From assembly GCA_002269645.1 (NCBI GenBank), contig NIVC01002876.1, positions 68,605-132,604 on the forward strand: DNA of 64,000 nucleotides, written 5' to 3'. Positions 5,031 through 62,731 of the stretch are shown one piece after another. Position numbers and translations under genes: made by a program. Under the pieces are notes generated by a model that had not been told where the DNA came from, made no database searches, and worked only from the letters and a program-made list of their open reading frames with translations. This stretch comes from Macrostomum lignano. Lineage: Eukaryota. Position 1 is the stretch's first letter; each line of letters begins with the position of its first letter.

Positions 5031-8000
5031 TCATAGCAGCCGCATCAAGCTGCTAGGCGTGCCGGAGGCGGCGGCGGCGTTGCCCCCGTGTCCGGCGCCG
5101 CTAGTCGCTTTGCTGCCGGTGCCGCTGGAACGCATCCGGCCTCGACTGCCAGCGGCTGCGGCAGCGGCGGCTGCAGCCTCCGCCTCCTGCTGCTGCCGCT
5201 TCCTATTGAGCAAGTAGGCCTGATAAGCGCCAGGCGGCAGCGTCGCCGAGGCGTCCGTCCGTTTAGCGGCCGATTCGCGCACCTTGTCCTGAAAGGTCGG
5301 GATCTTCTGGCGCGGCCTAGGGATCAACTGCAGCGAGCCCGGCTTGCAATGGCTCGGCACGCCGACCTCAGGCAGCGTATCGGCCGAAGCTGCCGTCTCC
5401 GCCGCCGGGGCCTCGTCGTCATCGTCTGCATCGGCGATCTCGTCCAGTGGCACATCCTCCTCAGTGTGGTGCGTCACCGCCGTGTCCGGTCGACTGGCCG
5501 ATCGCCGCTCGGCCGCCGTAGTCGGCAACCCGGCCACCGCCTCGGCCAGCAAGTCGCGCAGCCGACGCAGCAGACGTTCGCCGTCGGCCTCGCCGACAGG
5601 CATCTGCAGTGCCTGTTTGAGAATATCGGCTGCGGCGCTGACGCCGGCCCGGGCGGCCTCGTTCTCGGCTTCGGCTCTGCTGAGATCGTCCTCGGCGGCC
5701 CGTTTCAAGGACTCCTGCTCGTCCAGCTGTTGGGCCAGCGATTCGATCTCTTCGCGCTGCTCTTCTACCTATATAAATTTTAGATTATTGAGATTAGACA
5801 CTGTACTCATTGTTGCACGCGTAATTGTTTTGTCTTCCTGTTAATTTATTGACTTTTTGCAGTGCTTTTTTGCGTGATCTCTACCCCACCACTCCCTTCA
5901 TCTCTACCCCACCACTCCCTTCATCTCTACCCCACCACTCCCTTCATCTCTACCCCACCACTCCCTTCATCTCTACCCCACCACTCCCTTCATCTCTACC
6001 CCACCACTCCCTTCATCTCTACCCCACCACTCCCTTCATCTCTACCCCACCACTCCCTTCATCCCTACTACACTGCTGCCTTAATCTTTACACCACCACT
6101 CCCTTCATCTCTACCCCACCACTCCCTTCATCCCTACTACACTGCTGCCTTAATCTCTACACCACCACTCCCTTCATCCCTACTACACTGCTGCCTTAAT
6201 CTCTACACCACCACTCCCTTCATCTCTACCCCACCACTCCCTTCATCCCTACTACACTGCTGCCTTAATCTCGACACCACCACTCCCTTCATCTCTACCC
6301 CACCACTCCCTTCATCCCTACTACACTGCTGCCTTAATCTCGACACCACCACTCCCTTCATCTCTACCCCACCACTCCCTTCATCCCTACTACACTACTG
6401 CCTTCATCTCTACTCCATCATTCCCTTTATCTCTACTCCACCACTCCCTTCATCTCTACTCCACCATTCCCTTCATCTCTACTCCACCATTCCCTTCATC
6501 TCTAATCCACCATTCCCTTCATCTCTACTCCACCACTCCCTTCATCTCTACTCCATCATTCCCTTCGTCTCTACTCCACCACTCCCTGTATCTCTACTCT
6601 ACCACTCCCTTCATCTATCTGTCATACATCACTACCTGTGCATTCCTAATCAGAAGAATTCTCCCCCTCCGCACTTGAATTGCCCGGAAACAAGCAGCAA
6701 CGAAGACTCAGAAAGACAAACAAGAAGCCCCGTAACCGCACCTGAACGCGCAGGTTTTCGCTCTCCCGTTCCATGGCTTCCATTTCGGCCTCGCGTCGCT
6801 TGAACTCGTCAACAAGCAGGTCGAGCTCCTTCCGTTTCTGGCGCAGCATCAGTATGATGCGCTGGTGGCAGGCAAACTTAGTGGCCGACTCTTTCTGGCC
6901 GCGCTCCAGCTCCGCTATGCGACGGCGCTGCTCGCGAAGGCGCTTACGAATCTCCGCGTTCTCCTCCATCAGCTCCACCTGATCACGGGTTGGTTGTATA
7001 ATCTGTATTGTCTCTAACAAATCACAATAGGCTTAATTTAGGTTTAAAAATAGAAATTAATAGCAATACACATAGCACCTTCAACATTGCACATTCAACA
7101 AGCTCGCCAATGCTGTACGCAGGCACGCACTCATACACACGCTCACGCAGGGTGTACAACAGCTCTATCTATTCGTCAGACATGTACACTCTCTTGGGGG
7201 GCTGGCCCTCAAGGGCACGACAACCCATCGGCCAATTTTTGTGCACACGAGCCCCAAATGAACGCGTTTGCGCACGGAATCGAACCACGGGCTCGTGACG
7301 CGAGAGTCAGACCCGTTTACCTCTGAGCTGCTCCTCCCCCAATACATCAATCATTTGAAATTTAATTTAAAAAGTTGCATATTTCATAGAGCTGCTAGCC
7401 TATTACAGCTTCATTTTGCACTCGCTTACGGTGCTTGTCTAGAGACATACTCAGCCGTGAACTAATAATAATAACTGATTACACCTGCACTGACGGGCAG
7501 ATTTGCAACTGGCAGCTCAGCCGCAGCTATTAATTGCGCAGCGCATCTGAAGGCTGCGTACCGATGTTCAGTCCAAGGATTGGGGGGTCGTCTCCATACA
7601 CAGTCTCAACTACCCCAGCTAATGCTGGCACCCATTTTACAGCTGGGTGAACTGACCCACTAACTTGCTCACCTGTTTCTCAGACATCTTGAACATCTGC
7701 GATTGTATAGACACATTCTCTCGAATAGTTCGCTTAGTAGTTTCGGCCATTTGTTTGTTAGAAACTTTGCGAAAATCCGCCGCCACGTGGTTAACTCGGG
7801 TCACCATGTCCTTTTTAAGCCGGTCTCTGTCCAGCTGGCGGGGTTAAACAAACAATCGTAGAATAAAATCACAAATTTAAATGGAAAATTTGACATAAAA
7901 AGTAACAAAAAAATCAGTGATAATTTCCTACCAGATTTTTAGCGTGAATCCTCTGCTTAGCAGCCTCGTGATCCTCCAGCATCTTGTTAAACTCCTCAGT

Positions 8001-8501
8001 GAGCGCATTGTACCTGGCTATGATGACTTCGCGATCCCGTTTAAACTCTTCTAACGAGGCTAATTTGGTTGCGGCCAAGTTGTTCTCGCTGGTCAGCTGG
8101 TCCTTCATCTCCTGGAACTCGGTGCGAAGCCGCTGCAACAGCTGCTCCCATTCTTCTTTTTTCTGCTCCTTGAGCTGGCGCTGACCGGTGAGTCGGTCCT
8201 GCAGCTCGGCAATTTCGTCGTCCCTCTGCTCCATGGTCTTCTTGAGAAAGGCGACCGAGTCTTGGCGAGTCTTGCTGCTGTCCTCGAATGCGCTGAGCAG
8301 CTGGCTGTTCACCTGCTCGAGCTGGCGGTGCTTCTCCTGGTAGCGAGCGAGCCGGCGCTCCCAGTCCTGGATGTGCTCAAGCAGCTGCTCAAGCGACAAC
8401 TCGTAGCTATAATCTGGCCCCTCCTCTTCTTCTTGCTCCTCGGCTTCGTCTTCTCGCTTGCCTTTGCTAGCCTTCTTGCCAGCTTTCTTCTTTGGCGGCA
8501 T
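5031..8501 (-). CDS. CFAP157: Cilia- and flagella-associated protein 157; 4 exons: 7932-8501, 7673-7834, 6742-6978, 5031-5768 (568 aa)
   Basis: All introns are GT-AG and phase 0. The spliced protein MPPKKK...IQDWERRLARYQEK...FQEMKDQLTSENNLAATKLASLEEF...LDRDRLKKDMVTRVNHVAADFRKVSNKQMAETTKRTIREN...HQRIILML...CKPGSLQLIPR is collinear with vertebrate CFAP157 ([61 protein letters not shown]). Confidence 0.9.
5878..6615. repeat. 23-bp C-rich minisatellite (ctctaccccaccactcccttcat) with longer composite variants, in CFAP157 intron 3
   Basis: Direct periodicity. Confidence 0.95.
7485..7655 (-). mobile_element. 5'-truncated copy of the tRNA/CORE-like SINE, in CFAP157 intron 2
   Basis: Shares ccccagctaatgctggcacccattttacagctgggtgaactga and cagctcagccgcagctatt...gcatctgaaggctgcgtac with the copy at 34370-34899. 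Confidence 0.8.
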
Positions 8502-8619
8502 CTTTTCTTTTCAAAGGCTGATTGACGTGCAGATAGTTGATTAATATTTGGTGGCTGACGAGCATGCAACAGGAGGTTAAGTGCTTTATGTTAATACGAG
8601 GGTGTCCATTCAGCGTGTG

Positions 8620-9255
8620 TCTCTTAGTATCTATCTATGTGTCCTAGCATCCGTCTATGTGTCCGTTTTAGTGTCTCTTAGTATCCATCCATGTGTCCTA
8701 GCATCCGTCTATGTGTCCGTTTTAGCGTGTCTTAGTATCCATCCATGTGTCCTAGCATCCGTCTATGCGTCCGTTTTAGTGTGTCTTAGTATCTATCCAT
8801 CCATGTGTCCTAGCATCCGTCTATGTGTCCGTTTTAGTGTCTCTTAGTATCCATCCATGTGTCCTAGCATCCGTCTATGTGTCCGTTTTAGCGTGTCTTA
8901 GTATCCATCCATGTGTCCTAGCATCCGTCTATGCGTCCGTTTTAGTGTGTCTTAGTATCTATCCATCCATGTGTCCTAGCATCCGTCTATGCGTCCGTTT
9001 TAGTGTGTCTTAGTATCCATCCATGTGTCCTAGCATCCGTCTGTGTGTTTCAGTGTGTCTTAGTATCCATCCATGTGTCCTAGCATCCGTCTATGCGTCC
9101 GTTTTAGTGTGTCTTAGTATCTATCCATCCATGTGTCCTAGCATCCGTCTATGCGTCCGTTTTAGTGTGTCTTAGTATCCATCCATGTGTCCTAGCATCC
9201 GTCTGTGTGTTTCAGTGTGTCTTAGTATCCATCTGTGTCCTAGCATCCGTCTATA
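8620..9255. repeat. About 55-59-bp minisatellite (gtgtcttagtatccatccatgtgtcctagcatccgtctatg..ccgttttagt) upstream of the CFAP157 ATG
   Basis: Direct periodicity. Confidence 0.9.
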
Positions 9256-9386
9256 CACCGTTTGAAATAAAGCAGAAAGAAGACAACCGCAGAAGCAGAA
9301 GCCCAGCTGCAAGCCAACTACGCATCAGCTCTCATCTCATATCAAGCCGACGTTTGGGGGTGTTTCAAAAGTAACGAGAATTTTGT

Positions 9387-10000
9387 TATAATCCATAAAA
9401 ATAAAGACTTTCTGTGACAATATTTGCGTTCTCCGAGATTTTATTTGGTAATATTCAATAATATCCCGTAAAGTCTTTATGTCTATGGTTTATACGAGAT
9501 TACACATGCCTTTTTCGGGAGTTATTTTCATAAATCCCTCGGGCCTCAGGCCCTCGTGATTTATACAAATAACTCCCTCAAAAGGCATGTTTAATCTGAT
9601 ACATAACTTTTGATGGGATGTACGTATGAACCTGAAATTTTCACCCAACAATATGAACAACTAAAAGCTTTATATTTTAAGCCTTATATAGCTGCAAGCA
9701 ACTGTGTAACCGTAAATGAAAATCCATGCCTCGAGATTGAAGATTACGATTTTTGTCTATGGCAAAAAGACTCAAAAAGTTTAAAATTTGAAGGCGTTTA
9801 AACTTCAAATTGTTTGAAGTTTAAACAATTTGAATTTAAACAATTAATGGTTGTTTAAACAATTTAAACAACCATAGACAATTGCAAAAAAGCAATTGTC
9901 TATGGTTGCTGAGTCTATGGAGCAAACACACATGGGAAGGAATCGGTTTGCGCGCAGTGTTCAGCCTGGCTAACATTAGTCTATGGCCAAAACTTGTGTT
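9387..10000. other. Cluster of perfect and near-perfect hairpins with recurring CCATAGAC/GTCTATGG motif (probable non-autonomous palindromic DNA element relics)
   Basis: Inverted arms 9393-9411/9470-9488; long imperfect stem 9497-9597 centred on gggcc-tca-ggccc; gtttaaacttcaaa-ttg-tttgaagtttaaac near 9797-9827; caaccatagacaattgc-aaaaaa-gcaattgtctatggttg 9869-9908. Confidence 0.65.
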
Positions 10001-11216
10001 GAAATCAACAGGCTCTTATGGATTCTTGTGCAGTCAACTTTCATGGGAGAGTCAATTGCTTGTTTGTCTTTTTCTCACTTTTTTTCTCTAACCTTTATGT
10101 ACATAACACTGGCCTGTTCACACGCGCTCCTTCGAATAAACTTTTTCTTGACCACATCATGGAGCTGAGATCCGCAGCTTTCATTTGAATCAAGTTACAA
10201 TTGAAACGGACTGAAATTATGTCCGCTAGAAGACATAGTAGCAAGGGTTCCGGAACTTTTGACGGACAGTAGTTTCAGTGCATTATTGCAGTGTGTGAAT
10301 TCTCATAAACGGTGATCACATCAGCTGCAAGCTGGAACCCGCACTCATCGGGGTCAGGCAATAATTCATTGGGTAAACAATAGCGCTAAACTCTGTGCAT
10401 GCAATCCCAAATACAGGAAAAGAGCCCGGCGTGGGCTACAGCATGTACATGTATACGCTTCACTGCCAATCCAGTTTTTTTCGGATAGAGAGAAGATGGG
10501 AAAGAGACTTTTGGTTGAGGCTTAATCGCTAGGCAAATATGCATACCTAATGTGTACCCACATCAGTACGGGCTTAATTACCTAAATGTATGTACACTCA
10601 GTGTCGCTAACAGGAGGCAGTAATGCCGGATACAGAATACGAAACAATTCTGCATCAAACAGGTGCTTGCATATTAATGGCAGTATCTACTAAATTGGGA
10701 AATAATTTTATACCTATATGTGCGAGGATAGATCAAATTGGATGAAACCTAATGTTGTTGCTAAGGGAAAATCTTGATAATAATTGTGGTAGCTAGCGTG
10801 CAAGTGCACTACAAGAAATGCATATACGAGTATACGCCAGGTCGCGTACAGCAGAAGCTCAAACCTATACGTAGGCAGTATTAAAATTGAAACACAGCAG
10901 CAGATAGGTATGAGAGGCTGAATGCAGCAACTGTAAACTAGCCAATGAACAACTGCCTGTATAGCCTCTAATTGCATCTCACTGGCTGCCAAGCGCAGGG
11001 GAAGCTGCAGAAGAAACAAAGAGAGGAATGATAGCAGCATATAAGATATTTCTGCCAAGCTGTCCAACAGAGCGCCTGAAAACGCAGCAAGCGAACAGGA
11101 CTAGTTCGTCAAACACTTCTTATTAACAATAGGAGCATTTGAAGCGGCTATAGCGAGTAGATTTCTAAGGCGAGACTTAACTGTAACTAAAGAGCGCACA
11201 AGCCCCCAACGCAGCC

Positions 11217-13718
11217 ATGGCTGACAGTGACGCGCGTAAGTGGCTGCTCTGCTTCTTTTGCGTACCCATTTCTGTCATAGTTTTCTTCTTTCAGTTCTTT
11301 TCAGTTCGTTCATTTCTAACTAATTTCTTTTGCTGCTAGTGATGATTGTGATGATACTTTTTTACATTAACGAACTTCAACGAACCACGGTCAACTTGTC
11401 ATAGAGTTACGAAACAACACCTCCTATTCAACACAGAACTGAAGGCAGTATTCTCTTATTTTGATCGGGACGGCACTGGCAAGCTGGATGTTAACGAGAT
11501 TCAAGAGGTGCTTAACGCACTCGGACAGTGCATGACGCCAGACGAAATCAAGGAAATTATGCAGAAGGAGGACATTAATTGTAAGCTGAATTTATCAACT
11601 AATCTAGCACGATTTTGTCTGCCTTATAAACAATAAATTAAAAACCCACAGCTGACGGAGCAATGGACATCAAGGAGTTCATTTCGTTCTTCAAAAAATA
11701 TGGCAAAGAAGCTAATAAAATAAGTCGGGAGATTCGCGACGCCTTCAAGGTAACGCTTTTATTCTTCTGTCAAATTGCTTAATAAAACGTGCCCATTGGC
11801 ACGTTGGCAGCAAGTTTCAAAATAATCGAATTTTAAGGACGTCAAGATACGAGTATCAGCGATTCTTTCCGAAAATTTGGACTTTCAAATACGCGATCTT
11901 TTTAATTTTTCGAGTTTAAAAAATTTAAACCAACGGTTTCCCGATCGTGCAAGTTGTCAATCATAGTACGCTCGTTTTTTTCTCTTTATCATTAGATTAA
12001 CCGCCCTTCGTAACTTTTATGAAAAAAGCTTGATATTTTGTCTTGAAGACATTGGACAAAGTGCTTTGAATTCCGTATGCCTTGAAATATGCTAGTACTT
12101 TATACAGCCGTTCTATTGATAGTCTTAATTCTATTAATCCACGTCTCACTACAGAAATTCGACAAGCAAGGTCGCGGCTACCTGACCCAGGCCGACTTGG
12201 AGAAGATTCTGACCCAGACTGGCGCATTTCCATTCAGCAAGGAGGAGGCCGAGATGTGCTTTAAAGCATTCGACACCAACAAGGACGGCAAGATGGACTA
12301 CGAAGGTAATAAATAATACGGATCGAACTTATGTTGTCAAACTAGGAAGGGTCTTCAGATAGTTTAAGATATTTCAAGTCCTTAGTATAACAAGAGTTAT
12401 ACCCCTCTAGTGGTGTCCCTCCGGTGTTAAACCCCTCTAGTGGTATGTCCCTCCAGCATTATACCCATCTAGTGGTATGTCCCTCCAGCATTATACCCAT
12501 CTAGTGGTATGTCCCTCCAGCATTATACCCATCTAGTGGTATGTCCCTCCAGCATTATACCCATCTAGTGGTATGTCCCTCCAGCATTATACCCATCTAG
12601 TGGTATGTCCCTCCAGCATTATACCCATCTAGTGGTATGTCCCTCCAGCATTATACCCATCTAGTGGTATGTCCCTCCAGCATTATACCCATCTAGTGGT
12701 ATGTCCCTCCAGCATTATACCCATCTAGTGGTATGTCCCTCCAGCATTATACCCATCTAGTGGTATGTCCCTCCAGCATTATACCCATCTAGTGGTATGT
12801 CCCTCCAGCATTATACCCATCTAGTGGTATGTCCCTCCAGCATTATACCCATCTAGTGGTATGTCCCTCCAGCATTATACCCATCTAGTGGTATGTCCCT
12901 CCAGCATTATACCCATCTAGTGGTATGTCCCTCCAGCATTATACCCATCTAGTGGTATGTCCCTCCAGCATTATACCCATCTAGTGGTATGTCCCTCCAG
13001 CATTATACCCATCTAGTGGTGTGTACCTCCAGCATTATACCCATCTAGTGGTGTGTACCTCCGGTGTTATACCCCTCTAGTGGTGTGTCCCTCCGGTGTT
13101 ATACCCCTCCAGTGTTATGCCCCTCCAGCATTATACCCCTCTAGTGGTATGTCCCTCCGGTGTTAAACCCCTCTAGTGGTATGTACCTCCGCTGTTATAT
13201 CCCTCTAGTGGTATGTCCCTCTGGTGTTATACCCATCTAGTGGTATGTCCCTCCGGTGTTATACCCCTCTAGTGGTATGTACCTCCGGTGTTATACCCCT
13301 CTAGTGGTATGTCCCTCTGGTGTTACACCCCTCTAGTGGTATGTCCCTCCGGTGTTATACCCCTCTAGTGGTATGTACCTCCGGTGTTAAACCCCTCTAG
13401 TGGTATGTCCCTCTGGTGTTATACCCTCTAGTGGTATGTCCCTCCGGTGTTATACCCCTCTAGTGGTATGTCCCTCCGGTGTTATACCCCTCTAGTGGTA
13501 TGTACCTCCAGTGTTATGCCCCTCCAGTGTTATACTCATTCAGTGTTATACCCCAGCAGTGATATATCCTCCAGTTTTTCAGTGAGTAATGCTTTTTTAA
13601 AGAAATTCTAATAATTCTTTATACCCACAACCCAAACTATATTGTTGCAGAGTTTGCCAACTTCCTGTGTGCCATCTGCCCGAGCTTTGACGATCTGGAG
13701 AAGCTGAACAATAAGTGA
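11217..13718 (+). CDS. Calmodulin-like EF-hand calcium-binding protein; 5 exons: 11217-11235, 11437-11580, 11652-11749, 12155-12305, 13651-13718 (159 aa)
   Basis: GT-AG introns with consistent phases (1,1,0,1). EF loops DRDGTGKLDVNE, DINSDGAMDIKE, DKQGRGYLTQAD and DTNKDGKMDYEE. Too divergent to be canonical calmodulin. Confidence 0.9.
12400..13560. repeat. 32-bp minisatellite (tagtggtatgtccctccagcattatacccatc) in intron 4 of the calmodulin-like gene
   Basis: Homogeneous core of about 20 identical units with diverged units at both edges. Confidence 0.97.
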
Positions 13719-14199
13719 AAAAGCGTGAATTCAATGACAGTAGAAATGAACCTATCAGTAACAGCCACGCCAGTTCAAAACTATTTTGACCTATACCATG
13801 CTAATCCAACACGTTTGCCTAAAAAAAGACCCTACCTAAACATTGGCTAATTTGCTTCTGTTAAAACATTTAAAATAAATAGATAAACAACAAAAGTAAT
13901 AAAAACACATTGTGACTACTGTTAGTAGTGCAAAATTCAAGATTTACTTTCTTTCAATTAACCACGCAAAAGGAAGAGCAACACTACAGGCAACAATGGG
14001 TTTGGTTACTTCACATGGCAATGACTAATAAACGTCAGGCTGCTATAAAAACTACTCAGCACCAAGTTAGTACTGTTTAGTAGATAGAAGAGTTAATATA
14101 AAGCAATAAAATTCTAACAACCGGATTTAACAGATTTGCGACTGCAGATAAATTTGAAACAGGTCATGATTAGCAAGAAAAAATGCGTTATTACACACA

Positions 14200-14430
<231 letters not shown>

Positions 14431-14510
14431 GATATTCATAAGGCAGTTTGAAACTGCAAACCACGCACTCGGAAGATATTGAAGGTTACCAGTTGTCGAA
14501 AGTTCGAAAA

Positions 14511-14551
14511 AAACCGATATTTCGGCCCAGACTGGGCCTTCGTCAGGGTTT
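14511..14551 (-). ncRNA. Minimal type I hammerhead ribozyme, copy 1
   Basis: Minus strand reads AAACC-CUGACGA-A-GGCCCA guc UGGGCC-GAA-AUAU-C^GGUUU: conserved CUGANGA/GAAA core, stem II, palindromic 4-nt stem III (AUAU), AUC cleavage triplet, stem I AAACC/GGUUU. Confidence 0.85.
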
Positions 14552-16386
14552 ATTTATTCGGGTTTAAAAACAAATATATTGGCAGTGAAGTTATTGTAAC
14601 ATAATTTCAATATATATATATGCTACTTTTGGGGGTGCACTGAGCAGTGTTGAGTAAAGATGTGTACGTATAATTAGTTAAAAACGTGAGTTGAAGCACG
14701 CTGATTGGTTAAAGATTGGCAGCTTAAAGCCTTGCACAAAAAATATTAAAGATGTTAGGTGCTATAGAAAAACAGATTTAGAGCGTAGAAGTGTATGAAT
14801 AAGCATCTTGAAAAGTTCAACAAATAAGTTATTTACGCCCGTAGAATTGAGAACAAATATTAAATTAAAACAGAGCACTGAGAACTTTTCAAAAAGAAGT
14901 GCAAGTAAATAGATGTTATTACATAAACAGTAAATAAATTGAGTCGCCAGGCAGGCCACTAGTTGCAGTTGGCGGCGTCTGGTCACAGATCGCCGCCTGC
15001 ACAGCCCCTGGTCACAGGCGACTGGGCACTGCAGATCAGTTGAGGCTAGATTATCAGTAGTAGTAGCACTAGTAGTTGCAGTAGTAGCTCGTAGTAGTAG
15101 TAATGGAAGTAGTAGTAGTACAAGTATTAGTAGAGTAGTAGTAGAGCAGTCGTAGGCGTAGTCGTAGTAGAGACGTACTGGTAAGCAGTTATTTGAAGTA
15201 GCCAGGCAGGCCACTAGTCGCAGTTGGCGGCGTCTGGTCACAGATCGCCGCCTGCACAGCCCCTGGTCACAGGCGACTGGGCACTGCAGATCAGTTGAGG
15301 CTAGATTATCAGTAGTAGTAGCACTAGTAGTTGCAGTAGTAGCTCGTAGTAGTAGTAATGGAAGTAGTAGTAGTACAAGTATTAGTAGAGTAGTAGTAGA
15401 GCAGTCGTAGGCGTAGTCGTAGTAGAGACGTACTGGTAAGCAGTTATTTGAAGTAGCCAGGCAGGCCACTAGTCGCAGTTGGCGGCGTCTGGTCACAGAT
15501 CGCCGCCTGCACAGCCCCTGGTCACAGGCGACTGGGCACTGCAGATCAGTTGAGGCTAGATTATCAGTAGTAGTAGCACTAGTAGTTGCAGTAGTAGCTC
15601 GTAGTAGTAGTAATGGAAGTAGTAGTAGTACAAGTATTAGTAGAGTAGTAGTAGAGCAGTCGTAGGCGTAGTCGTAGTAGAGACGTACTGGTAAGCAGTT
15701 ATTTGAAGTAGCCAGGCAGGCCACTAGTCGCAGTTGGCGGCGTCTGGTCACAGATCGCCGCCTGCACAGCCCCTGGTCACAGGCGACTGGGCACTGCAGA
15801 TCAGTTGAGGCTAGATTATCAGTAGTAGTAGCACTAGTAGTTGCAGTAGTAGCTCGTAGTAGTAGTAATGGAAGTAGTAGTAGTACAAGTATTAGTAGAG
15901 TAGTAGTAGAGCAGTCGTAGGCGTAGTCGTAGTAGAGACGTACTGGTAAGCAGTTATTTGAAGTAGCCAGGCAGGCCACTAGTCGCAGTTGGCGGCGTCT
16001 GGTCACAGATCGCCGCCTGCACAGCCCCTGGTCACAGGCGACTGGGCACTGCGGATCAGTTGAAGCTAGATTTTCAGTAGTAGTAGCACTAGTAGTTGCA
16101 GTAGTAGTAGTAGTGGTAGTAGAGTAGTAGTAGTACAGTCGTAGTCGTAGCCGTAGTCGTAGTAGTGTCGTGCGTCTTAAATATTCAGCTGCAGAAATAG
16201 TACTCTTGCTTATCCCAAGTAGATTTTTGGCGGAGAATAGCTCGTATACGAAGATATTTTGTTGACAAACATGGCGAGCCTCAATAATAGTCCGGTCCTG
16301 GGTACAGATATTCATAAGGCAGTTTGAAACTGCAAACCACGCACTCGGAAGATATTGAAGGTTACCAGTTGTCGAATGTTCGAAAA

Positions 16387-16427
16387 AAACCGATATTTCG
16401 GCCCAGACTGGGCCTTCGTCAGGGTTT
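16387..16427 (-). ncRNA. Minimal type I hammerhead ribozyme, copy 2
   Basis: Identical to copy 1, offset 1876 bp. Confidence 0.85.
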
Positions 16428-18262
16428 ATTTATTCGGGTTTAAAAACAAATATATTGGCAGTGAAGTTATTGTAACATAATTTCAATATATATATATGCT
16501 ACTTTTGGGGGTGCACTGAGCAGTGTTGAGTAAAGATGTGTACGTATAATTAGTTAAAAACGTGAGTTGAAGCACGCTGATTGGTTAAAGATTGGCAGCT
16601 TAAAGCCTTGCACAAAAAATATTAAAGATGTTAGGTGCTATAGAAAAACAGATTTAGAGCGTAGAAGTGTATGAATAAGCATCTTGAAAAGTTCAACAAA
16701 TAAGTTATTTACGCCCGTAGAATTGAGAACAAATATTAAATTAAAACAGAGCACTGAGAACTTTTCAAAAAGAAGTGCAAGTAAATAGATGTTATTACAT
16801 AAACAGTAAATAAATTGAGTCGCCAGGCAGGCCACTAGTTGCAGTTGGCGGCGTCTGGTCACAGATCGCCGCCTGCACAGCCCCTGGTCACAGGCGACTG
16901 GGCACTGCAGATCAGTTGAGGCTAGATTATCAGTAGTAGTAGCACTAGTAGTTGCAGTAGTAGCTCGTAGTAGTAGTAATGGAAGTAGTAGTAGTACAAG
17001 TATTAGTAGAGTAGTAGTAGAGCAGTCGTAGGCGTAGTCGTAGTAGAGACGTACTGGTAAGCAGTTATTTGAAGTAGCCAGGCAGGCCACTAGTCGCAGT
17101 TGGCGGCGTCTGGTCACAGATCGCCGCCTGCACAGCCCCTGGTCACAGGCGACTGGGCACTGCAGATCAGTTGAGGCTAGATTATCAGTAGTAGTAGCAC
17201 TAGTAGTTGCAGTAGTAGCTCGTAGTAGTAGTAATGGAAGTAGTAGTAGTACAAGTATTAGTAGAGTAGTAGTAGAGCAGTCGTAGGCGTAGTCGTAGTA
17301 GAGACGTACTGGTAAGCAGTTATTTGAAGTAGCCAGGCAGGCCACTAGTCGCAGTTGGCGGCGTCTGGTCACAGATCGCCGCCTGCACAGCCCCTGGTCA
17401 CAGGCGACTGGGCACTGCAGATCAGTTGAGGCTAGATTATCAGTAGTAGTAGCACTAGTAGTTGCAGTAGTAGCTCGTAGTAGTAGTAATGGAAGTAGTA
17501 GTAGTACAAGTATTAGTAGAGTAGTAGTAGAGCAGTCGTAGGCGTAGTCGTAGTAGAGACGTACTGGTAAGCAGTTATTTGAAGTAGCCAGGCAGGCCAC
17601 TAGTCGCAGTTGGCGGCGTCTGGTCACAGATCGCCGCCTGCACAGCCCCTGGTCACAGGCGACTGGGCACTGCAGATCAGTTGAGGCTAGATTATCAGTA
17701 GTAGTAGCACTAGTAGTTGCAGTAGTAGCTCGTAGTAGTAGTAATGGAAGTAGTAGTAGTACAAGTATTAGTAGAGTAGTAGTAGAGCAGTCGTAGGCGT
17801 AGTCGTAGTAGAGACGTACTGGTAAGCAGTTATTTGAAGTAGCCAGGCAGGCCACTAGTCGCAGTTGGCGGCGTCTGGTCACAGATCGCCGCCTGCACAG
17901 CCCCTGGTCACAGGCGACTGGGCACTGCGGATCAGTTGAAGCTAGATTTTCAGTAGTAGTAGCACTAGTAGTTGCAGTAGTAGTAGTAGTGGTAGTAGAG
18001 TAGTAGTAGTACAGTCGTAGTCGTAGCCGTAGTCGTAGTAGTGTCGTGCGTCTTAAATATTCAGCTGCAGAAATAGTACTCTTGCTTATCCCAAGTAGAT
18101 TTTTGGCGGAGAATAGCTCGTATACGAAGATATTTTGTTGACAAACATGGCGAGCCTCAATAATAGTCCGGTCCTGGGTACAGATATTCATAAGGCAGTT
18201 TGAAACTGCAAACCACGCACTCGGAAGATATTGAAGGTTACCAGTTGTCGAATGTTCGAAAA

Positions 18263-18303
18263 AAACCGATATTTCGGCCCAGACTGGGCCTTCGTCAGGG
18301 TTT
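18263..18303 (-). ncRNA. Minimal type I hammerhead ribozyme, copy 3
   Basis: Identical to copy 1, offset 3752 bp. Confidence 0.85.
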
Positions 18304-19645
18304 ATTTATTCGGGTTTAAAAACAAATATATTGGCAGTGAAGTTATTGTAACATAATTTCAATATATATATATGCTACTTTTGGGGGTGCACTGAGCAGT
18401 GTTGAGTAAAGATGTGTACGTATAATTAGTTAAAAACGTGAGTTGAAGCACGCTGATTGGTTAAAGATTGGCAGCTTAAAGCCTTGCACAAAAAATATTA
18501 AAGATGTTAGGTGCTATAGAAAAACAGATTTAGAGCGTAGAAGTGTATGAATAAGCATCTTGAAAAGTTCAACAAATAAGTTATTTACGCCCGTAGAATT
18601 GAGAACAAATATTAAATTAAAACAGAGCACTGAGAACTTTTCAAAAAGAAGTGCAAGTAAATAGATGTTATTACATAAACAGTAAATAAATTGAGTCGCC
18701 AGGCAGGCCACTAGTTGCAGTTGGCGGCGTCTGGTCACAGATCGCCGCCTGCACAGCCCCTGGTCACAGGCGACTGGGCACTGCAGATCAGTTGAGGCTA
18801 GATTATCAGTAGTAGTAGCACTAGTAGTTGCAGTAGTAGCTCGTAGTAGTAGTAATGGAAGTAGTAGTAGTACAAGTATTAGTAGAGTAGTAGTAGAGCA
18901 GTCGTAGGCGTAGTCGTAGTAGAGACGTACTGGTAAGCAGTTATTTGAAGTAGCCAGGCAGGCCACTAGTCGCAGTTGGCGGCGTCTGGTCACAGATCGC
19001 CGCCTGCACAGCCCCTGGTCACAGGCGACTGGGCACTGCAGATCAGTTGAGGCTAGATTATCAGTAGTAGTAGCACTAGTAGTTGCAGTAGTAGCTCGTA
19101 GTAGTAGTAATGGAAGTAGTAGTAGTACAAGTATTAGTAGAGTAGTAGTAGAGCAGTCGTAGGCGTAGTCGTAGTAGAGACGTACTGGTAAGCAGTTATT
19201 TGAAGTAGCCAGGCAGGCCACTAGTCGCAGTTGGCGGCGTCTGGTCACAGATCGCCGCCTGCACAGCCCCTGGTCACAGGCGACTGGGCACTGCGGATCA
19301 GTTGAAGCTAGATTTTCAGTAGTAGTAGCACTAGTAGTTGCAGTAGTAGTAGTAGTGGTAGTAGAGTAGTAGTAGTACAGTCGTAGTCGTAGCCGTAGTC
19401 GTAGTAGTGTCGTGCGTCTTAAATATTCAGCTGCAGAAATAGTACTCTTGCTTATCCCAAGTAGATTTTTGGCGGAGAATAGCTCGTATACGAAGATATT
19501 TTGTTGACAAACATGGCGAGCCTCAATAATAGTCCGGTCCTGGGTACAGATATTCATAAGGCAGTTTGAAACTGCAAACCACGCACTCGGAAGATATTGA
19601 AGGTTACCAGTTGTCGAATGTTCGAAAAAAACGTGGTTTGCAGTT

Positions 19646-22216
<2,571 letters not shown>

Positions 22217-22659
22217 GGCACACAGAGGGGACACACTCACACAGACACAATCAATCTAGCACAGACTGATGAATTCAATTGGACTAAATTAAACTAATAA
22301 ATTGCACTTTAATAAAATATTCTGCGGTAAGCAGGCTGGGGAAACAGCGATTCAGTGGTTAAAAAGTATATAAATGGTATTGGTGAATTACTTGTGCTTC
22401 ACAGCAAGCAAGTGCAAGTAAATCTGATTTAATTGAGGCATGCAGCATAGGATCATGACAAAACCGGATGGTGAAGGGGTTACAAGTTCACTTCGCTATT
22501 GCTGATCTTGAGCTCACTGAGAATATGAAAAGAAGACAACCTAATATCGAGAATATGGATGACTACATCTCCGAGACCTTTACATCATAAATTATCTCAT
22601 GCTCTCTCTCTCTAGATGACTAAAGGATCACGGAACCTCGAGATAATTCCACGATGTTC

Positions 22660-23244: not shown

Positions 23245-24603
23245 TCAATCAGTTTTGACAGCAGCTGGTCGCAGCAGGCGCAGCATTAGCAACACTATCA
23301 TGACAGCGTGACAGCAGTGCAACAGGCCGCTACTAAAGCTAGTTGACGGATAGGTGTTCCAGCACAGCTCTATACAGCCCAGCAACAGTAGCTGAGGAGC
23401 GGCGGGCAGCCTGCACCGCCAGACCAGATAGTGCAAACTGTGAAAATACCAAACGTAGAACTGATAATGCAGCGATCTGGCGCAGACAACGCCGATAAAG
23501 TTACTAACAAACAGTACGCAGACAATGTCTTCAACTGCTGGCAAAACTGTCTCTCCTTGCTGTTTCCCAGCCGCTTGTAGAGGATGGAAACGAATTAATC
23601 GACTAATAGAGAGCCGGCGAGTTCTAGCGTAGGCCAATAGAAAGACCAACAGCAGGGTCAGGTGGACAGTCAGCAGGCCAGCGTGGAACAGCCGATTATG
23701 AAAGACAGCCTCGGGCAGGAAGCGCCAGTTCACCGTCCATTTAAACAGGAATTGTCTGGAGAATTCGAAAGCCCGGCCAAGGTAGGCGGACGTGCTGTAG
23801 GTGAGAAACGGGGCGCCTAGCAACAGTTGGATCAGGGCGCAGACAGACAGCTGGCCGGCCACCTCCCAGACGTGATGACGCATGAGCAGCAGCAGCAGGA
23901 GGCCCGGCGCGTACAGCAGGATGTTCATCTTAACTGACACGGCCAAGCTGTACAGCACGCAGCCAACGGACCAGCGATCGTATAGGAAGCACAGCAGAGC
24001 GGCGTGAAAGAATAGCATAGCAACTGGATCGTTGAATAGACGCAACAGGTGGATAGAATGCACTCGATAGGATAGGCAGCACATGAACACTAACAGGTAG
24101 GGCGGTACCCGGCCAATACGGCGGTAAATTAGCAGAACAATAGCAGTATTGGTCAGGTAGATAGCAGCGAATGCGCACTGAGCAATGAGTATCTGACTGC
24201 CCCGATCTGTCAAATAGTACAGAGCCGAATAAAAGTACACGAATCCGGCCGGATACACGAGAGGCCCGGTGTCGCCGCTAAGCAGACGATAGTCTCTAGT
24301 ACCATTTAGGAAGCCTTCAACTTCTTGCATATAGGCTCGCCAATCGATTTCTGTGTACGGCACGCGCCAGACGATAAGGGCGCAGACAAGAATTTCGGCT
24401 AGTAGCAGCGGTACCGCAACCAAACCGGTGGCGCCCGGTTCCGTTAGCAGATAGCGCGCCCATTCTACTGGGGTACGCGAGGCCAGCTTTTGTCGGCAAG
24501 AATTTATTAGAGAGCGAAGGCTGCCGCTAGCAGACGAGGAAGCTGACGCCGCCGATTTCGGCTTGGCTGGTCGACGGGGCGGCGGAGCCATCGGATGCGG
24601 CAT
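23245..24603 (-). CDS. ALG3: Dol-P-Man:Man5GlcNAc2-PP-dolichol alpha-1,3-mannosyltransferase, intronless CDS (start at ATG 24603 or 24591)
   Basis: Motifs VPYTEIDWRAYMQEVEGFLNG, GDTGPLVYPAGFVY, RVHSIHLLRLFND, SLAVSVKMN, FLFKWTVNWRF, SLHYQFYVWYFHSL and ELCWNTYPST. The track's extension to 24705 runs into the 23-bp repeat. Confidence 0.95.
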   Translation of the reverse strand: MPHPMAPPPRRPAKPKSAASASSSASGSLRSLINSCRQKLASRTPVEWARYLLTEPGATGLVAVPLLLAEILVCALIVWRVPYTEIDWRAYMQEVEGFLNGTRDYRLLSGDTGPLVYPAGFVYFYSALYYLTDRGSQILIAQCAFAAIYLTNTAIVLLIYRRIGRVPPYLLVFMCCLSYRVHSIHLLRLFNDPVAMLFFHAALLCFLYDRWSVGCVLYSLAVSVKMNILLYAPGLLLLLLMRHHVWEVAGQLSVCALIQLLLGAPFLTYSTSAYLGRAFEFSRQFLFKWTVNWRFLPEAVFHNRLFHAGLLTVHLTLLLVFLLAYARTRRLSISRLIRFHPLQAAGKQQGETVLPAVEDIVCVLFVSNFIGVVCARSLHYQFYVWYFHSLHYLVWRCRLPAAPQLLLLGCIELCWNTYPSTSFSSGLLHCCHAVMIVLLMLRLLRPAAVKTD

Positions 24604-24699
24604 GAAGATGGGTGAAGTGAGGCTGCGATTAATAAGCGTCATCACGATTCTAAGAGACAATTTAAAGTGATTCCGGAGACAATCTGGGGCGATTCTAAG

Positions 24700-25143
24700 A
24701 GGCAACTCAAGTCGATTCTAAGAGGCAACTCAAGTCGATTCTAAGAGGCAACTCAAGTCGATTCTAAGAGGCAACTGAAGTCGATTCTAAGAGGCAATTC
24801 AAGTCGATTCTAAGAGGCAACTCAAGGCGATTCTAAGAGGCAATTCAAGGCGATTCTAAGCGGCAACTGAAGGCGGCTCTAAGAGGCAACTCAAGGCGAT
24901 TCTAAGAGGCAACTCAAGGCGATTCTAAGAGGCAATTCAAGGCGATTCTAAGCGGCAACTGAAGGCGGTTCTAAGAGGCAATTCAAGGCGATTCTAAGAG
25001 GCAACTCAAGGCGATTCTAAGAGGCAATTCAAGGCGATTCTAAGCGGCAACTGAAGGCGGTTCTAAGAGGCAACTCAAGTCGATTCTAAGAGGCAACTGA
25101 AGGCGGTTCTAAGAGGCAGTTTAAGGCGATTTTAAGAGGCAAT
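24700..25143. repeat. 23-bp minisatellite (gattctaagaggcaactcaagtc/ggc) between MORN3 and ALG3
   Basis: Direct periodicity. Confidence 0.95.
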
Positions 25144-25690: not shown

Positions 25691-27207
25691 TCAATCGTCC
25701 TCTGGGCAGAATGTCTCAGCGGCATCTTCCAGAACCTTCTGCGTATCGGCCAGCTTAATCTGATAATGATGACGATGGGGTATAATAAGGGATTTAGAAG
25801 TTCGTGAACAGACGGTGCAGTACGTTGTGTAATACCTTTGAAGCCCTAGTAAGTCTCATTACGAAAACAAGGCTTCTCAAACAACATCTCTGAACGGGGA
25901 TTATTATCCCAAACTAACCAACTTTAAATTGGGATTATTATCCCATCCAACACCTAATTTGTTTTGGGATTATTATCCCATCCAACACCTGATTTGTTTT
26001 GGGATTATTATCCCATCCAACACCTAATTTGTTTTGGGATTATTATCCCATCAGCACCTGATTTGTTTTGGGATTATTATCCCATCCAACACCTAATTTG
26101 TTTTGGGATTATTATCCCATCAGCACCTACTTGTTTTGGGATTATTATCCCATCCAACACCTAATTTGGTTTGGGATTATTATCCCATCAGCACCTACTT
26201 GTTTTGGGATTATTATCCCATCCAACACCTAATTTGGTTTGGGATTATTATCCCATCAGCACCTACTTTGTATTGGGATTATTATCCGACCCAACACCTA
26301 CTTTGTATTGGGATTATTATCCCACCCAACACCTACTTTGTATTGGGATTATTATCCCACCCAACACCTACTTTGTATTGGGATTATTATCCCACCCAAC
26401 ACCTACTTTGTATTGAGATTATTATCCGTTTATTTGTAAAGGGAAAAATATCACGTGCAAGGCTACCTTTGCGTTGGGATAACAATGTCCCACCAATGCC
26501 CACTAGAGCAATGGGATAGTTTCGCAGTATCTAGAAATCCCATCATCATCAGCTGCACTCACCTCAGAGATGGGATACTGAGTAGGATTAGCCGCCTCCT
26601 CCCGCCCGAAGTCGCTCATAGCTCCGCACTTGGCCACGTCGTCCTTCCAGACGCCCTCATAGATCTGGCCAGTGCTCAGATTATAAAACTTGCCCGGCCC
26701 GTTCTTTTTATCGTCGCGCCATTCGCCTTCGTAGCGGTTCTCGTTCGGCAACCGCAGCATGCCCTGGCCGCAGCGCTGGTCGTTAAGCCATTCGCCTTCG
26801 TACACGGACCCGTCTGCGTAGTACATCCGGCCCCAGCCGCTTCGCTTATCGGCGTAAAATTCGCCCTCGTAATATTCGTTCTCGCCGTACCAATTCTCGC
26901 CGTAGCCGTGCCGCTTGTCGGCCTTCCAGCCACCAGAGTACTGCTTCTTATAGCCGGCACCATTGGGGAGTGGCACGCTGTACACGCCGAATCCGCAGCG
27001 ACGACCGTCACGCCAGTCGCCTTCGTACATGGCGCCTGTGCCTTTCCACACCTGGGTGCCGCGGCCTTGCTTCTTATTGGCCTCCCATTCGCCAGTGTAT
27101 TCGTCGCCTCGAACCGAATAGATTGTATTGCGTAATCCGGCTTTGTCAGCCTTTCTATCCCATTCTTTCCACAGCGGCTCGGATTGAATATCGCGCCTAT
27201 GCGGCAT
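25691..27207 (-). CDS. MORN3: MORN repeat-containing protein 3; exons 26563-27207 (or from ATG 27240) and 25691-25759 (about 237 aa)
   Basis: MPHRRDIQSEPLWKEWDRKADKAGLR...YTGEW...GTQVWK...YEGDW...SGWGRMYY...AKCGAMSDFGREEAANPTQYPISE|IKLADTQKVLEDAAETF follows human MORN3 (LWKGWDRKAQRNGLR; AKCGTMIDFGRDEAPEPTQFPIPEVKILDPDGVL). The intron is GT-AG, phase 0. Confidence 0.92.
25897..26430. repeat. 34/35-bp minisatellite with hairpin core GGGAT-TATT-ATCCC, in the MORN3 intron
   Basis: Direct; no unique spacers. Confidence 0.95.

Positions 27208-35619: not shown

Positions 35620-35662
<43 letters not shown>

Positions 35663-54784: not shown

Positions 54785-62731
<7,947 letters not shown>

What the first reader, a model, noticed from the sequence alone, without database searches (positions are those of the whole stretch)
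14430..19632. Large hammerhead-ribozyme-punctuated tandem element (about 1.9-kb retrozyme-like / non-autonomous Penelope-like unit)
Seen: three near-identical units, each carrying on the minus strand AATAAA followed by AAACC-CUGACGA-A-GGCCCAgucUGGGCC-GAA-AUAU-C^GGUUU, so ribozymes are spaced exactly one unit apart. Established: minimal type I hammerheads with a palindromic stem III, thought to act as dimers, are characteristic of Penelope-like element pseudo-LTRs and of tandem non-LTR retrozymes. In those elements self-cleavage releases monomer RNAs that can circularise, and the described animal units are typically a few hundred nt. Inference: this is an unusually large, RT-less element carrying repetitive cargo, processed to 1876/1366-nt monomer (possibly circular) RNAs and mobilised in trans by a PLE reverse transcriptase.
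Basis: partly seen in the sequence, partly recalled or inferred. Interest (0 to 1): 0.88.

Follow-up and report, generated by a model that had tools for sequence, protein, structure and literature searches.

The report
Hammerhead-bearing non-autonomous Penelope-like retroelement
This is a young, protein-less mobile element of the flatworm Macrostomum lignano that carries a minimal hammerhead ribozyme in every 1.4-1.9-kb unit and inserts only into (TAGA)n microsatellites, a larger and more target-specific relative of known "retrozymes" that could help test what hammerheads do for Penelope-like retrotransposons.

Summary
Three identical minimal type-I hammerhead motifs lie on the minus strand, 1876 bp apart, in a 2.8-unit head-to-tail array. 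The array is better bounded as 14430/14435-19645. Each unit has 651 bp of unique sequence plus a 255-bp minisatellite (4.7, 4.7 and 2.7 copies).

No Rfam hammerhead model matches. The motif nevertheless meets every published feature of Penelope-like-element (PLE) "min-HHRs".

The ORF led to three more loci in Macrostomum lignano contigs (98-100% identical, plus an 82% subfamily). All four insertions:
- sit inside (ATCT)n arrays in the same orientation;
- end 81-86 nt past the ribozyme cut site, beside a conserved hairpin;
- share TATCT microhomology with the target.

Three copies are 5'-truncated. The window copy starts 1 nt after the predicted cleavage site and is capped by a 13-nt inverted mini-copy. 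Partial tandems, an internal RT start and an inverted 5' piece are PLE insertion signatures.

No reading frame encodes RT or endonuclease. The 517-aa ORF is not conserved.

Verdict: a new, recently active, (TAGA)n-specific non-autonomous PLE/retrozyme-like family. Self-cleavage, circular RNA and the autonomous partner remain untested. Interest is moderate.

The parts
14221..14434 (.). (TAGA)n microsatellite, the target flank on the 3' side of the element (RNA sense). The last 5 nt (AGATA, 14430-14434) are microhomology shared with the element (RNA UAUCU).
   Evidence: TRF; sequence; junction comparison
14435..16310 (-). Unit A (1876 bp), the 3'-most unit in RNA sense. Its end at 14435 is the element's 3' terminus (putative reverse-transcription start), 81 nt after the ribozyme cut.
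16311..18186 (-). Unit B (1876 bp)
18187..19552 (-). Unit C (1366 bp; two fewer 255-bp repeats)
19553..19632 (-). Partial unit D (80 nt). The element's 5' end in RNA sense begins at G1.2, 1 nt after the predicted hammerhead cleavage site.
   Evidence: alignment
19633..19645 (+). 13-nt inverted mini-copy (GTGGTTTGCAGTT on +), the reverse complement of 14452-14464. It starts in the hairpin next to the 3' end, giving a second RT start site 17 nt internal to the first (PLE-like 'tail'/inverted 5' copy).
19646..19654 (.). 9-nt filler ATCTATATC between the inverted mini-copy and the microsatellite
19655..22217 (.). (TAGA)n microsatellite, the target flank on the 5' side of the element
   Evidence: TRF
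14511..14551 (-). Minimal type-I hammerhead, copy 1. Helix I 5 bp, CUGACGA, bulged A, helix II 6 bp with G10.1-C11.1, GAA, palindromic AUAU, C17. Cut between 14516 and 14515.
16387..16427 (-). Minimal hammerhead, copy 2 (cut between 16392 and 16391)
18263..18303 (-). Minimal hammerhead, copy 3 (cut between 18268 and 18267)
14553..14558 (-). AATAAA immediately 5' of helix I. It repeats at 16429-16434 and 18305-18310. It could be a poly(A) signal or a TATA-like box about 30-38 nt upstream of the cut site.
   Evidence: sequence; function inferred
14443..14457 (-). Hairpin GCAGUU-UCA-AACUGC just upstream of the 3' end. It is kept in the diverged subfamily as GCAGUU-UGA-AGCUGC.
14540..14900 (-). 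About 360 nt upstream of and including the 5' half of the ribozyme. This is the most conserved block between subfamilies (90-100% versus 68-84% elsewhere). It contains CCAATCAG and a (TA)n run, so it is a candidate promoter or RT-recognition region.
   Evidence: function inferred
14942..16166 (.). Internal 255-bp minisatellite, 4.7 copies plus a degenerate AGT-rich end. Arrays also at 16818-18042 (4.7 copies) and 18694-19408 (2.7 copies).
   Evidence: TRF
14762..16315 (-). 517-aa ORF through the minisatellite (also 16638-18191; a 347-aa version at 18514-19557). Judged non-functional.

Best explanation
The region is one insertion of a young, non-autonomous Penelope-like (PLE-type) retroelement of Macrostomum lignano. 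It can equally be called an oversized 'non-LTR retrozyme'.

Structure (shown). The RNA-sense strand is the minus strand. Each unit holds:
- a short leader after the ribozyme cut site;
- a variable 255-bp minisatellite;
- a conserved block of about 360 nt;
- AATAAA and a PLE-type minimal hammerhead.

Proposed cycle:
1. Multi-unit RNA is transcribed. Transcription is indirectly supported; a promoter in the conserved block is inferred.
2. The min-HHRs, probably paired or protein-assisted, cut at AUC^GG (inferred).
3. A PLE reverse transcriptase/GIY-YIG endonuclease supplied in trans nicks a (TAGA)n array. It primes cDNA synthesis internally on the RNA, 81-86 nt 3' of a cut site, next to a small hairpin, where the RNA reads UAUCU and can pair with the ...AGATA-3' DNA end. 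The junction and microhomology are shown at the four observable 3' junctions, in three of the four loci (L021's is hidden by a gap); the priming step is inferred.
4. The cDNA runs through more than one unit. It stops either prematurely (three 5'-truncated copies, shown) or at the 5'-OH end created by the ribozyme (the window copy starts 1 nt after the cut site, shown).
5. The other DNA end primes a second, abortive cDNA in the hairpin, which leaves the 13-nt inverted mini-copy (structure shown; mechanism inferred by analogy with the Anolis Poseidon element).
6. Unit number and minisatellite copy number can change later by unequal recombination.
For: Ribozyme:
- Three exact copies, none expected by chance.
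- The minimum-free-energy fold gives helices I and II with an open core.

Mobility and target:
- Further copies lie in M. lignano contigs NIVC01002743.1, NIVC01001007.1 and NIVC01000001.1.
- Window, L021 and L022 have unrelated flanks; L023, all microsatellite, differs in structure.
- All lie inside (ATCT)n in the same orientation, and the four observable 3' junctions (window, L022, both L023 copies; L021's is in a gap) share the same end and TATCT microhomology.
- 5' truncations are seen in L021, L022 and L023.
- Copies at different loci are 98.4-100% identical, so the family is recent.

PLE signatures:
- Partial tandem with terminal redundancy.
- The 5' end lies 1 nt from the cut site.
- Inverted 13-nt piece starting in the 3' hairpin.
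- The distance from cut site to RT start is 81-86 nt (64 nt for the second start). In Poseidon PAc it is 85-92 nt, with initiation in a stem-loop, two start sites defining the 'tail', and extension from both DNA strands (PMC11167929).
- Microsatellite bias, inverted 5' copies and tails are typical of PLEs (PMC8557442).

Non-autonomy:
- No Pfam domain in the ORF or in six frames of the unique part.
- The ORF is broken in the 82% subfamily.
- The ORF has no relatives among 1.84 billion representative proteins except M. lignano copies.

Transcription:
- Three GenBank gene models sit on element copies, and that annotation is RNA-seq-guided (PMC5730564).
Against: - No Rfam hammerhead model scores at all.
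- Cleavage is untested, and published min-HHRs cleave poorly in vitro.
- The classical double-hammerhead dimer is predicted less stable (-25.2 kcal/mol) than two monomers (-30.2) or a helix-II-swapped dimer (-42.7).
- Only 1 of 4 insertions has its 5' end at the cut site. An AATAAA/TATA-like box about 30 nt upstream could instead make that position a transcription start.
- One ribozyme copy in L021 has a 1-nt deletion. The L022 copy has a C.A mismatch in helix II, with no compensatory change.
- No autonomous PLE sharing the termini was found. The tools gave no access to the whole genome.
- The solo and multi-unit copies in L023 that share one 5' truncation show that the number of units need not date from insertion.
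Confidence: 0.8

Rival explanations
1. The element is a SINE-like passenger of a non-PLE reverse transcriptase, for example a LINE with a microsatellite 3' tail. The hammerhead-like motif would be incidental, and (ATCT)n would be an element-generated tail rather than a target.
For: Many LINE/SINE pairs end in short tandem repeats (own knowledge). All four observable 3' junctions abut (ATCT)n and share TATCT with it. No Rfam hammerhead hit. The partner RT was not identified.
Against: Long (ATCT)n arrays flank both ends of every copy, including 5'-truncated ones. More-than-unit tandems, an internal start next to a hairpin, an inverted 5' mini-copy and a min-HHR with all four non-descriptor hallmarks are PLE traits, not LINE traits. 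The chance of such a motif is 0.0025 per 64 kb.
Confidence: 0.08
2. The 5' end at GGUUUU marks a transcription start (AATAAATAAA acting as a TATA box about 30 nt upstream), not a ribozyme cut. The hammerhead would then be inactive or serve another role.
For: An A/T-rich TATA-like box lies 28-38 nt upstream of the cut site. Min-HHRs cleave poorly in vitro, and no RNA-seq ends at the HHR site were seen for Anolis Poseidon. The dimer fold is not favoured. Only one copy shows this 5' end.
Against: The end coincides to within 1 nt with the canonical cleavage position of a complete motif. A random 5' end would fall within 3 nt of that position with probability of about 0.2% per copy. The ribozyme block is 100% conserved across 11 of 13 copies and nearly so in the 82% subfamily.
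Confidence: 0.2
3. The array is a local tandem or segmental duplication (satellite-like) of a sequence that happens to contain a ribozyme-like motif, without retrotransposition. Alternatively it is an assembly artefact.
For: This genome is extremely rich in tandem repeats (15% of the genome, PMC5730564). The L023 solo and multi-unit copies show post-insertion changes in unit number.
Against: There are four loci, three with unrelated unique flanks (L023 differs in structure), with identical 3' ends at the four observable junctions, differing 5' truncation points and a common target and orientation. Multi-unit arrays recur in an independent assembly.
Confidence: 0.03
4. The unit is a protein-coding gene: a 517-aa Thr/Leu/Tyr-rich repeat protein with an 85-aa period, carrying a ribozyme in its 3' UTR.
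For: The ORF is open for 517 codons, including about 110 codons outside the repeats. The 255-bp period is a multiple of 3. GenBank carries 'hypothetical protein' models on it.
Against: In the 82% subfamily the repeat period is about 214 bp, every repeat has an in-frame TGA, and the C-terminal part has a 2-nt deletion. There is no Pfam domain. No homologue exists outside M. lignano among 1.84 billion representatives. Openness is expected on the (ACT)n-rich strand. An HHR-cut RNA would lack a cap.
Confidence: 0.03

Closest known systems
Metazoan non-LTR retrozymes (Cervera & de la Pena 2020, PMC7229834; Li et al. 2026, bioRxiv 10.64898/2026.07.22.740005)
   Same: Head-to-tail units that each carry a type-I hammerhead, with no protein, low GC, and a proposed dependence on PLE enzymes.
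   Different: Units here are 1366-1876 bp, against roughly 170-400 bp. The Li et al. pipeline caps the TRF period at 1000 bp, so it would miss this family. The ribozyme is the PLE 'minimal' form rather than the canonical form with loop-loop contacts. The unit carries an internal 255-bp minisatellite. Insertion is strict for (TAGA)n. Circular RNA has not been shown.
min-HHRs in PLE pseudo-LTRs (Cervera & de la Pena 2014, PMC4209133), including flatworm Cercyon elements of Schistosoma
   Same: Same ribozyme architecture: long helix II, short helix I, bulged nucleotide after A9, G10.1-C11.1, and a palindromic helix III stub. It is also located near the 3' end in a partial tandem.
   Different: There is no RT-EN ORF between the repeats. 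Sequence homology to any named PLE was not tested.
Poseidon PAc of Anolis carolinensis (Frangieh et al. 2024, PMC11167929)
   Same: Reverse transcription starts internally in or near a stem-loop, about 85-92 nt (here 81-86 and 64 nt) 3' of the HHR cut. Two start sites define a 'tail'. Both DNA strands are extended, which explains the inverted 5' pieces.
   Different: PAc is autonomous, targets AT-rich DNA and shows no primer-template homology. Here the target is (TAGA)n with 5-nt microhomology. No read ends at the HHR site were seen for PAc, whereas one copy here begins there.
Microsatellite-targeting PLEs: Naiad, Chlamys and Neptune (Craig et al. 2021, PMC8557442)
   Same: Strong insertion bias for microsatellites, complex tandem/inverted insertions, and tails.
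   Different: Their targets are (TA)n, (CA)n or (C)n, and Naiad/Chlamys mostly lack canonical HHRs. Here the target is a tetranucleotide repeat and an HHR is present.
EN-minus PLEs Athena/Coprina (cited in PMC8557442)
   Same: Short target-complementary repeats next to an HHR at the RNA 3' region, used to anneal to the target DNA end.
   Different: Those elements attach to telomeric overhangs and carry several repeat units. Here only UAUCU is present and insertion is internal to the chromosome.

Membership tests
PLE-type minimal type-I hammerhead (min-HHR) | Catalytic boxes CUGANGA ... GAAA and a UH cleavage triplet, in type-I order | tested here: met
   CUGACGA ... GAA-A ... U-C^G, three copies
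PLE-type minimal type-I hammerhead (min-HHR) | Unpaired nucleotide between A9 and 10.1; G10.1-C11.1 pair; palindromic 15.2-16.2; helix II 6-8 bp; helix I 4-5 bp (PMC4209133) | tested here: met
   Bulged A; G-C closing pair; AUAU; helix II 6 bp; helix I 5 bp (criteria)
PLE-type minimal type-I hammerhead (min-HHR) | Helices supported by compensatory changes among relatives | tested here: inconclusive
   13 copies, 11 of them identical. The only changes are a 1-nt deletion and a G-to-A that gives a C.A mismatch in helix II. There is no covariation to count.
PLE-type minimal type-I hammerhead (min-HHR) | Self-cleavage at the predicted site | not testable with these tools
   Only indirect: one genomic copy starts 1 nt after the site
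Rfam hammerhead families (types I, II, III, HH9, HH10) | Score at or above the covariance-model gathering threshold | tested here: not met
   No hammerhead hit at gathering score or at E<=10, even on 81 nt. The models expect a real helix III.
Non-LTR retrozyme | At least two consecutive tandem units, each with a complete type-I HHR | tested here: met
   Three units in the window; 4 and 4-5 in L021 and L023
Non-LTR retrozyme | No protein-coding capacity | tested here: met
   No domain in any frame. The long ORF is not conserved.
Non-LTR retrozyme | Small monomer (about 170-400 nt) accumulating as circular RNA | tested here: not met
   Monomers are 1366-1876 nt. Circularity is not testable here.
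Penelope-like element, non-autonomous derivative | Partial-tandem (pseudo-LTR) insertion with an HHR near the 3' end | tested here: met
   80-nt terminal redundancy, with the HHR 81-86 nt from the 3' end wherever that end is visible: window, L022 and both L023 copies; L021's 3' end is in an assembly gap
Penelope-like element, non-autonomous derivative | 'Tail'/two internal RT start sites and an inverted 5' copy | tested here: met
   A 13-nt inverted copy starting 17 nt internal to the main 3' end, in the hairpin. It is shorter than the usual 30-40 bp tail and is seen in one copy only.
Penelope-like element, non-autonomous derivative | Insertion bias for microsatellite or AT-rich DNA | tested here: met
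   4 of 4 loci lie in (ATCT)n, in the same orientation
Penelope-like element, non-autonomous derivative | RT plus GIY-YIG ORF (autonomous PLE) | tested here: not met
   Absent, hence 'non-autonomous'
Penelope-like element, non-autonomous derivative | Termini homologous to an autonomous PLE in the same genome | not tested
   No whole-genome nucleotide search of M. lignano was available. Protein-word searches with the N-terminal and C-terminal peptides found only element copies.

The most novel reading that the evidence does not exclude
The HHR-cleaved, 5'-OH RNA is the true retrotransposition template of this family. The 1.4-1.9-kb units are released, and perhaps circularised, as by far the largest animal retrozyme RNAs. 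Priming uses telomerase-like pairing of a UAUCU template stretch with the (AGAT)n DNA end. Because M. lignano is transgenic-tractable and the family is young, this would give a direct experimental system for the unresolved role of hammerheads in PLE mobility.
Probability: 0.3. Interest if true: 0.62.

Novelty: new variant of a known kind. Interest (0 to 1): 0.45.

Why it matters
What hammerheads do for Penelope-like elements is still described as unclear (PMC8557442), and the one biochemical study found no in vivo ends at the ribozyme site (PMC11167929).

This family offers several things at once:
- It is small, very young (copies up to 100% identical) and protein-less.
- It has a sharply defined target, (TAGA)n.
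- It has a defined 3' start.
- At least one genomic copy has a 5' end that maps to the cleavage site.
- Its host is a laboratory flatworm with established transgenesis.

It also shows that retrozyme-like elements can be several-fold larger than current detection pipelines allow and can carry expandable minisatellites. It further shows that such elements produce spurious 'hypothetical protein' models in the M. lignano annotation.

Tried and rejected
- Rfam scans at three stringencies gave no hammerhead hit. This is a limit of the models for min-HHRs, not evidence against the motif.
- A degenerate HHR pattern in viral contigs returned 20 unrelated contigs from the viral collection (none inspected further), and I dropped them.
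- Two metagenome scans, one with the HHR plus helix I and one with the conserved CCAAT block, found nothing.
- Exact-protein look-ups of the window's 517-aa ORF, three ALG3 start variants and the MORN ORF found no record. I therefore could not locate this same locus in another assembly to test for an assembly artefact.
- Three word-index protein searches found only three element-derived M. lignano models. One search missed a protein that it should have found, so the index is lossy.
- The exhaustive HMMER search used the C-terminal part of the ORF. With hindsight, the N-terminal/HHR-spanning peptide would have been the better probe for an autonomous partner.
- I considered and rejected the ORF as coding.
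- I considered that the inter-array sequences of the whole window might be one repeated element family. They are unrelated to each other.
- The weak mir-34 hit in each unit (16.8 bits against a 53.4 gathering score) was not pursued.

Full report
**1. What is in the sequence**

Reading 14000-20200 shows a block flanked on both sides by (TAGA)n (TRF: 14221-14434 and 19655-22217).

After masking tandem arrays, a self-comparison resolves the block into head-to-tail units that are 99.8-100% identical:
- A: 14435-16310 (1876 bp)
- B: 16311-18186 (1876 bp)
- C: 18187-19552 (1366 bp)
- D, a terminal partial unit: 19553-19632 (80 bp)

Each unit is 507 + 144 bp of unique sequence around a 255-bp minisatellite. 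The minisatellite has 4.7, 4.7 and 2.7 copies, which accounts exactly for the 510-bp length difference of unit C.

AATAAA lies directly 5' of each copy.

**2. Is it a hammerhead?**

No Rfam hammerhead family matches, at gathering score on the whole window, at E<=10 on 5.5 kb, or on 81 nt.

The motif nevertheless has the full catalytic boxes in type-I order, and the minimum-free-energy fold gives helix I (AAACC/GGUUU) and helix II (GGCCCA/UGGGCC) around an open core.

It also shows every feature that Cervera & de la Pena (PMC4209133) report for PLE min-HHRs:
- an unpaired nucleotide between A9 and 10.1;
- a G10.1-C11.1 pair;
- palindromic 15.2-16.2 (AUAU);
- a long helix II (6 bp);
- a short helix I (5 bp).

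Those authors stress that the first three of these (the extra nucleotide, the G10.1-C11.1 pair and the palindrome) were not built into their descriptor.

A descriptor I wrote finds only these three loci in the window. It finds 0.0025 loci per simulated 64-kb window.

Cautions:
- The classical double-hammerhead dimer is predicted at -25.2 kcal/mol. Two monomers give -30.2, and a dimer that swaps the near-palindromic helix II gives -42.7.
- Published min-HHRs cleave poorly in vitro, and the Anolis one needs its protein.
- Activity is therefore plausible but unproven.

**3. Relatives elsewhere**

The minus strand carries a 517-aa ORF through the minisatellite. Used as a probe, it hit 'hypothetical proteins' of Macrostomum lignano. 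Their contigs gave three more loci from assembly GCA_002269645.1.

- **L021:** a 5'-truncated copy followed by units of about 1617-1619 bp (3.7 repeats) with four ribozymes. It runs into an assembly gap.
- **L022:** a 5'-truncated monomer of a diverged subfamily, 82% identical, with repeats of about 214 bp.
- **L023:** a solo 5'-truncated copy, plus a copy with the same truncation point followed by units of 1876, 1365 and 1621 bp. One unit is interrupted by a 1231-bp hAT-like MITE.

The window's flanks match none of these loci, and L021 and L022 share no unique flank with each other or with the window. L023 lies entirely inside (ATCT)n, so its flanks cannot be compared and it is told apart by its structure.

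Copies at different loci are 98.4-100% identical, so the window is from M. lignano or a very close relative, and the family is young.

**4. Insertion signatures**

- All four loci lie inside (ATCT)n arrays, with the RNA-sense strand reading ATCT.
- The four 3' junctions that can be read (window, L022, both L023 copies; L021's is hidden by the gap) are the same...CUGCCUUAUGAA|UAUCU-(AUCU)n, or ...UUUUGCA|UAUCU in the subfamily. The end is therefore 81-86 nt after the cut site. The uncertainty comes from 5 nt (TATCT) shared between element and target.
- Just upstream is a hairpin, GCAGUU-UCA-AACUGC, retained in the subfamily with a U-A to U.G change.
- Three copies are 5'-truncated inside the minisatellite.
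- The window copy is not truncated. Its homology to full units begins at G1.2, 1 nt after C17^G1.1.
- The window copy is capped by a 13-nt inverted copy of GUGGUUUGCAGUU. The boundary of that piece lies at the hairpin loop, 17 nt internal to the main 3' end.

These features correspond to the published PLE pattern:
- partial tandems forming pseudo-LTRs, inverted 5' copies, a short 'tail' and microsatellite bias (PMC8557442);
- internal RT initiation in a stem-loop 85-92 nt 3' of the HHR cut, two start sites that define the tail, and extension from both cleaved DNA strands (PMC11167929).

**5. Non-autonomy and the ORF**

The ORF has no Pfam domain. Six-frame translation of the non-minisatellite part has none either.

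In the 82% subfamily the frame is destroyed. Every repeat has an in-frame TGA, the period is not a multiple of 3, and the C-terminal part has a 2-nt deletion.

An exhaustive HMMER search of 1.84 billion representative proteins found only two clusters, both from M. lignano element copies.

The ORF is best explained by the stop-free (ACT)n-rich strand.

**6. Conservation profile**

Between subfamilies:
- the roughly 360 nt upstream of and including the 5' half of the ribozyme are 90-100% identical;
- the minisatellite is 68-78% identical, with many gaps;
- the post-cut 81 nt are about 80% identical.

The conserved block contains CCAATCAG and a (TA)n run. A role as promoter or as RT-recognition region is my inference.

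Three GenBank gene models overlap element copies, and that annotation is RNA-seq-guided (PMC5730564). This is indirect evidence of transcription.

**7. Mechanism and its limits**

The most economical reading is target-primed reverse transcription by a trans-acting PLE enzyme at (TAGA)n. Priming would be beside the hairpin, where UAUCU can pair with the nicked ...AGATA-3' end. The cDNA would span more than one unit and run off either prematurely or at the ribozyme-generated 5' end.

I cannot tell whether the multi-unit structure comes from a multimeric transcript, from template jumping between cleaved monomers, or from rolling-circle copying.
- Unit lengths differ within single insertions (2.7/4.7/4.7 repeats here; 4.7/2.7/3.7 in L023).
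- All L021 units lack a TA dinucleotide in the (TA)n run that the window and L023 units have (the 82% subfamily copy also lacks it).
- The L023 solo and multi-unit pair shows post-insertion change in unit number.

A transcription start at GGUUUU, about 30 nt downstream of the AATAAATAAA box, is a live alternative to ribozyme cleavage for the 5' end.

**8. Comparison with known kinds, and novelty**

It works like, and meets the structural tests for, a non-autonomous PLE. It meets the tandem/HHR and non-coding criteria for non-LTR retrozymes but not their size range (about 170-400 nt; PMC7229834).

The recent vertebrate survey that links retrozymes to PLEs capped the TRF period at 1000 bp, so units like these would be invisible to it.

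I found no paper on hammerheads or PLEs in Macrostomum.

I rate it a new variant of a known kind, on the borderline with 'new member'. The distinguishing points are kb-sized units with an expandable minisatellite, strict tetranucleotide-microsatellite targeting with primer-template microhomology, and a copy whose 5' end marks the cleavage site.

Interest is moderate. Nothing here overturns the current picture, but the family is a promising handle on the open question of what hammerheads do for PLEs.

Noticed in passing
window 1-64000 (e.g. 1722-4253, 12396-13575, 29610-30769, 35504-37172, 55712-56108): About 30 mini- and microsatellite arrays, one every 1-2 kb, with unrelated units and unrelated inter-array sequence. 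One 22-mer array (29610-30769) sits in the apparent intron of a WD40/Prp17-like gene (28832-31844, minus strand).
   Followed up: partly
window 23245-24705 (-), 26503-27297 (-), 47676-48086 (+): Ordinary host genes lie next to the element. There is an ALG3 mannosyltransferase in a single exon (Pfam E=1e-140), a MORN-repeat protein, and a Bap31-like exon. The element is intergenic, about 3.6 kb downstream of ALG3 on the same strand.
   Followed up: partly
window 41560-43074 and 43261-43644 (+): A hAT-family transposase (BED zinc finger, Hermes DNA-binding domain, then the hAT dimerisation domain in a separate ORF). It is probably a hAT transposon with an intron or frameshift.
   Followed up: no
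window 63163-63346 / 63613-63799; 45403-45524 / 45801-45925: Two pairs of inverted repeats (95% and 86% identity), possibly MITE-like elements or long hairpins.
   Followed up: no
window 7476-7655, 34364-34899, 60980-61201: A short dispersed repeat family shared by three places in the window (80-96% identity, one copy inverted).
   Followed up: no
L021 12624-13056 and 14588-15020: Two identical 433-bp insertions (a 272-bp unit x 1.6, a partial tandem) in the same (ATCT)n array as the element, with no hammerhead core. This suggests a second, HHR-less family that also targets this microsatellite.
   Followed up: partly
L023 7514-8744: A 1231-bp hAT-like MITE (12-bp TIR CAGTGTTGGGCA, 8-bp TSD CTTACCAG) inserted into the minisatellite of one unit.
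   Followed up: yes
L023 2458-3515 versus 5833-12991: A solo 5'-truncated copy and a 3.6-unit copy share the same truncation point and 120 bp of flank but differ at 5 sites. Either this is a duplication or homeologue of one insertion, or unit number changed after insertion.
   Followed up: partly
L021 10001-16085; L022 10001-10423; L023 10001-10822: GenBank models BOX15_Mlig029014g1, BOX15_Mlig001677g1 and a third (P0003) take their coding sequence wholly or partly from the element's spurious ORF. In L021 the element is annotated as the terminal exon of an unrelated upstream gene.
   Followed up: partly
window 14573-14616, 16449-16492, 18325-18368 (+): A weak mir-34-like hairpin hit containing UGGCAGUG in each unit, on the strand opposite the ribozyme. 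It scores 16.8 bits against a gathering score of 53.4, so it is probably chance.
   Followed up: no
window 16420-16316 (-), same frame as the 517-aa ORF: The long ORF's frame stays open upstream through the whole hammerhead, back to the TAA of AATAAATAA. This recalls Poseidon PAc, whose ORF starts inside the HHR. The frame is closed by a TAG in the L022 subfamily.
   Followed up: partly
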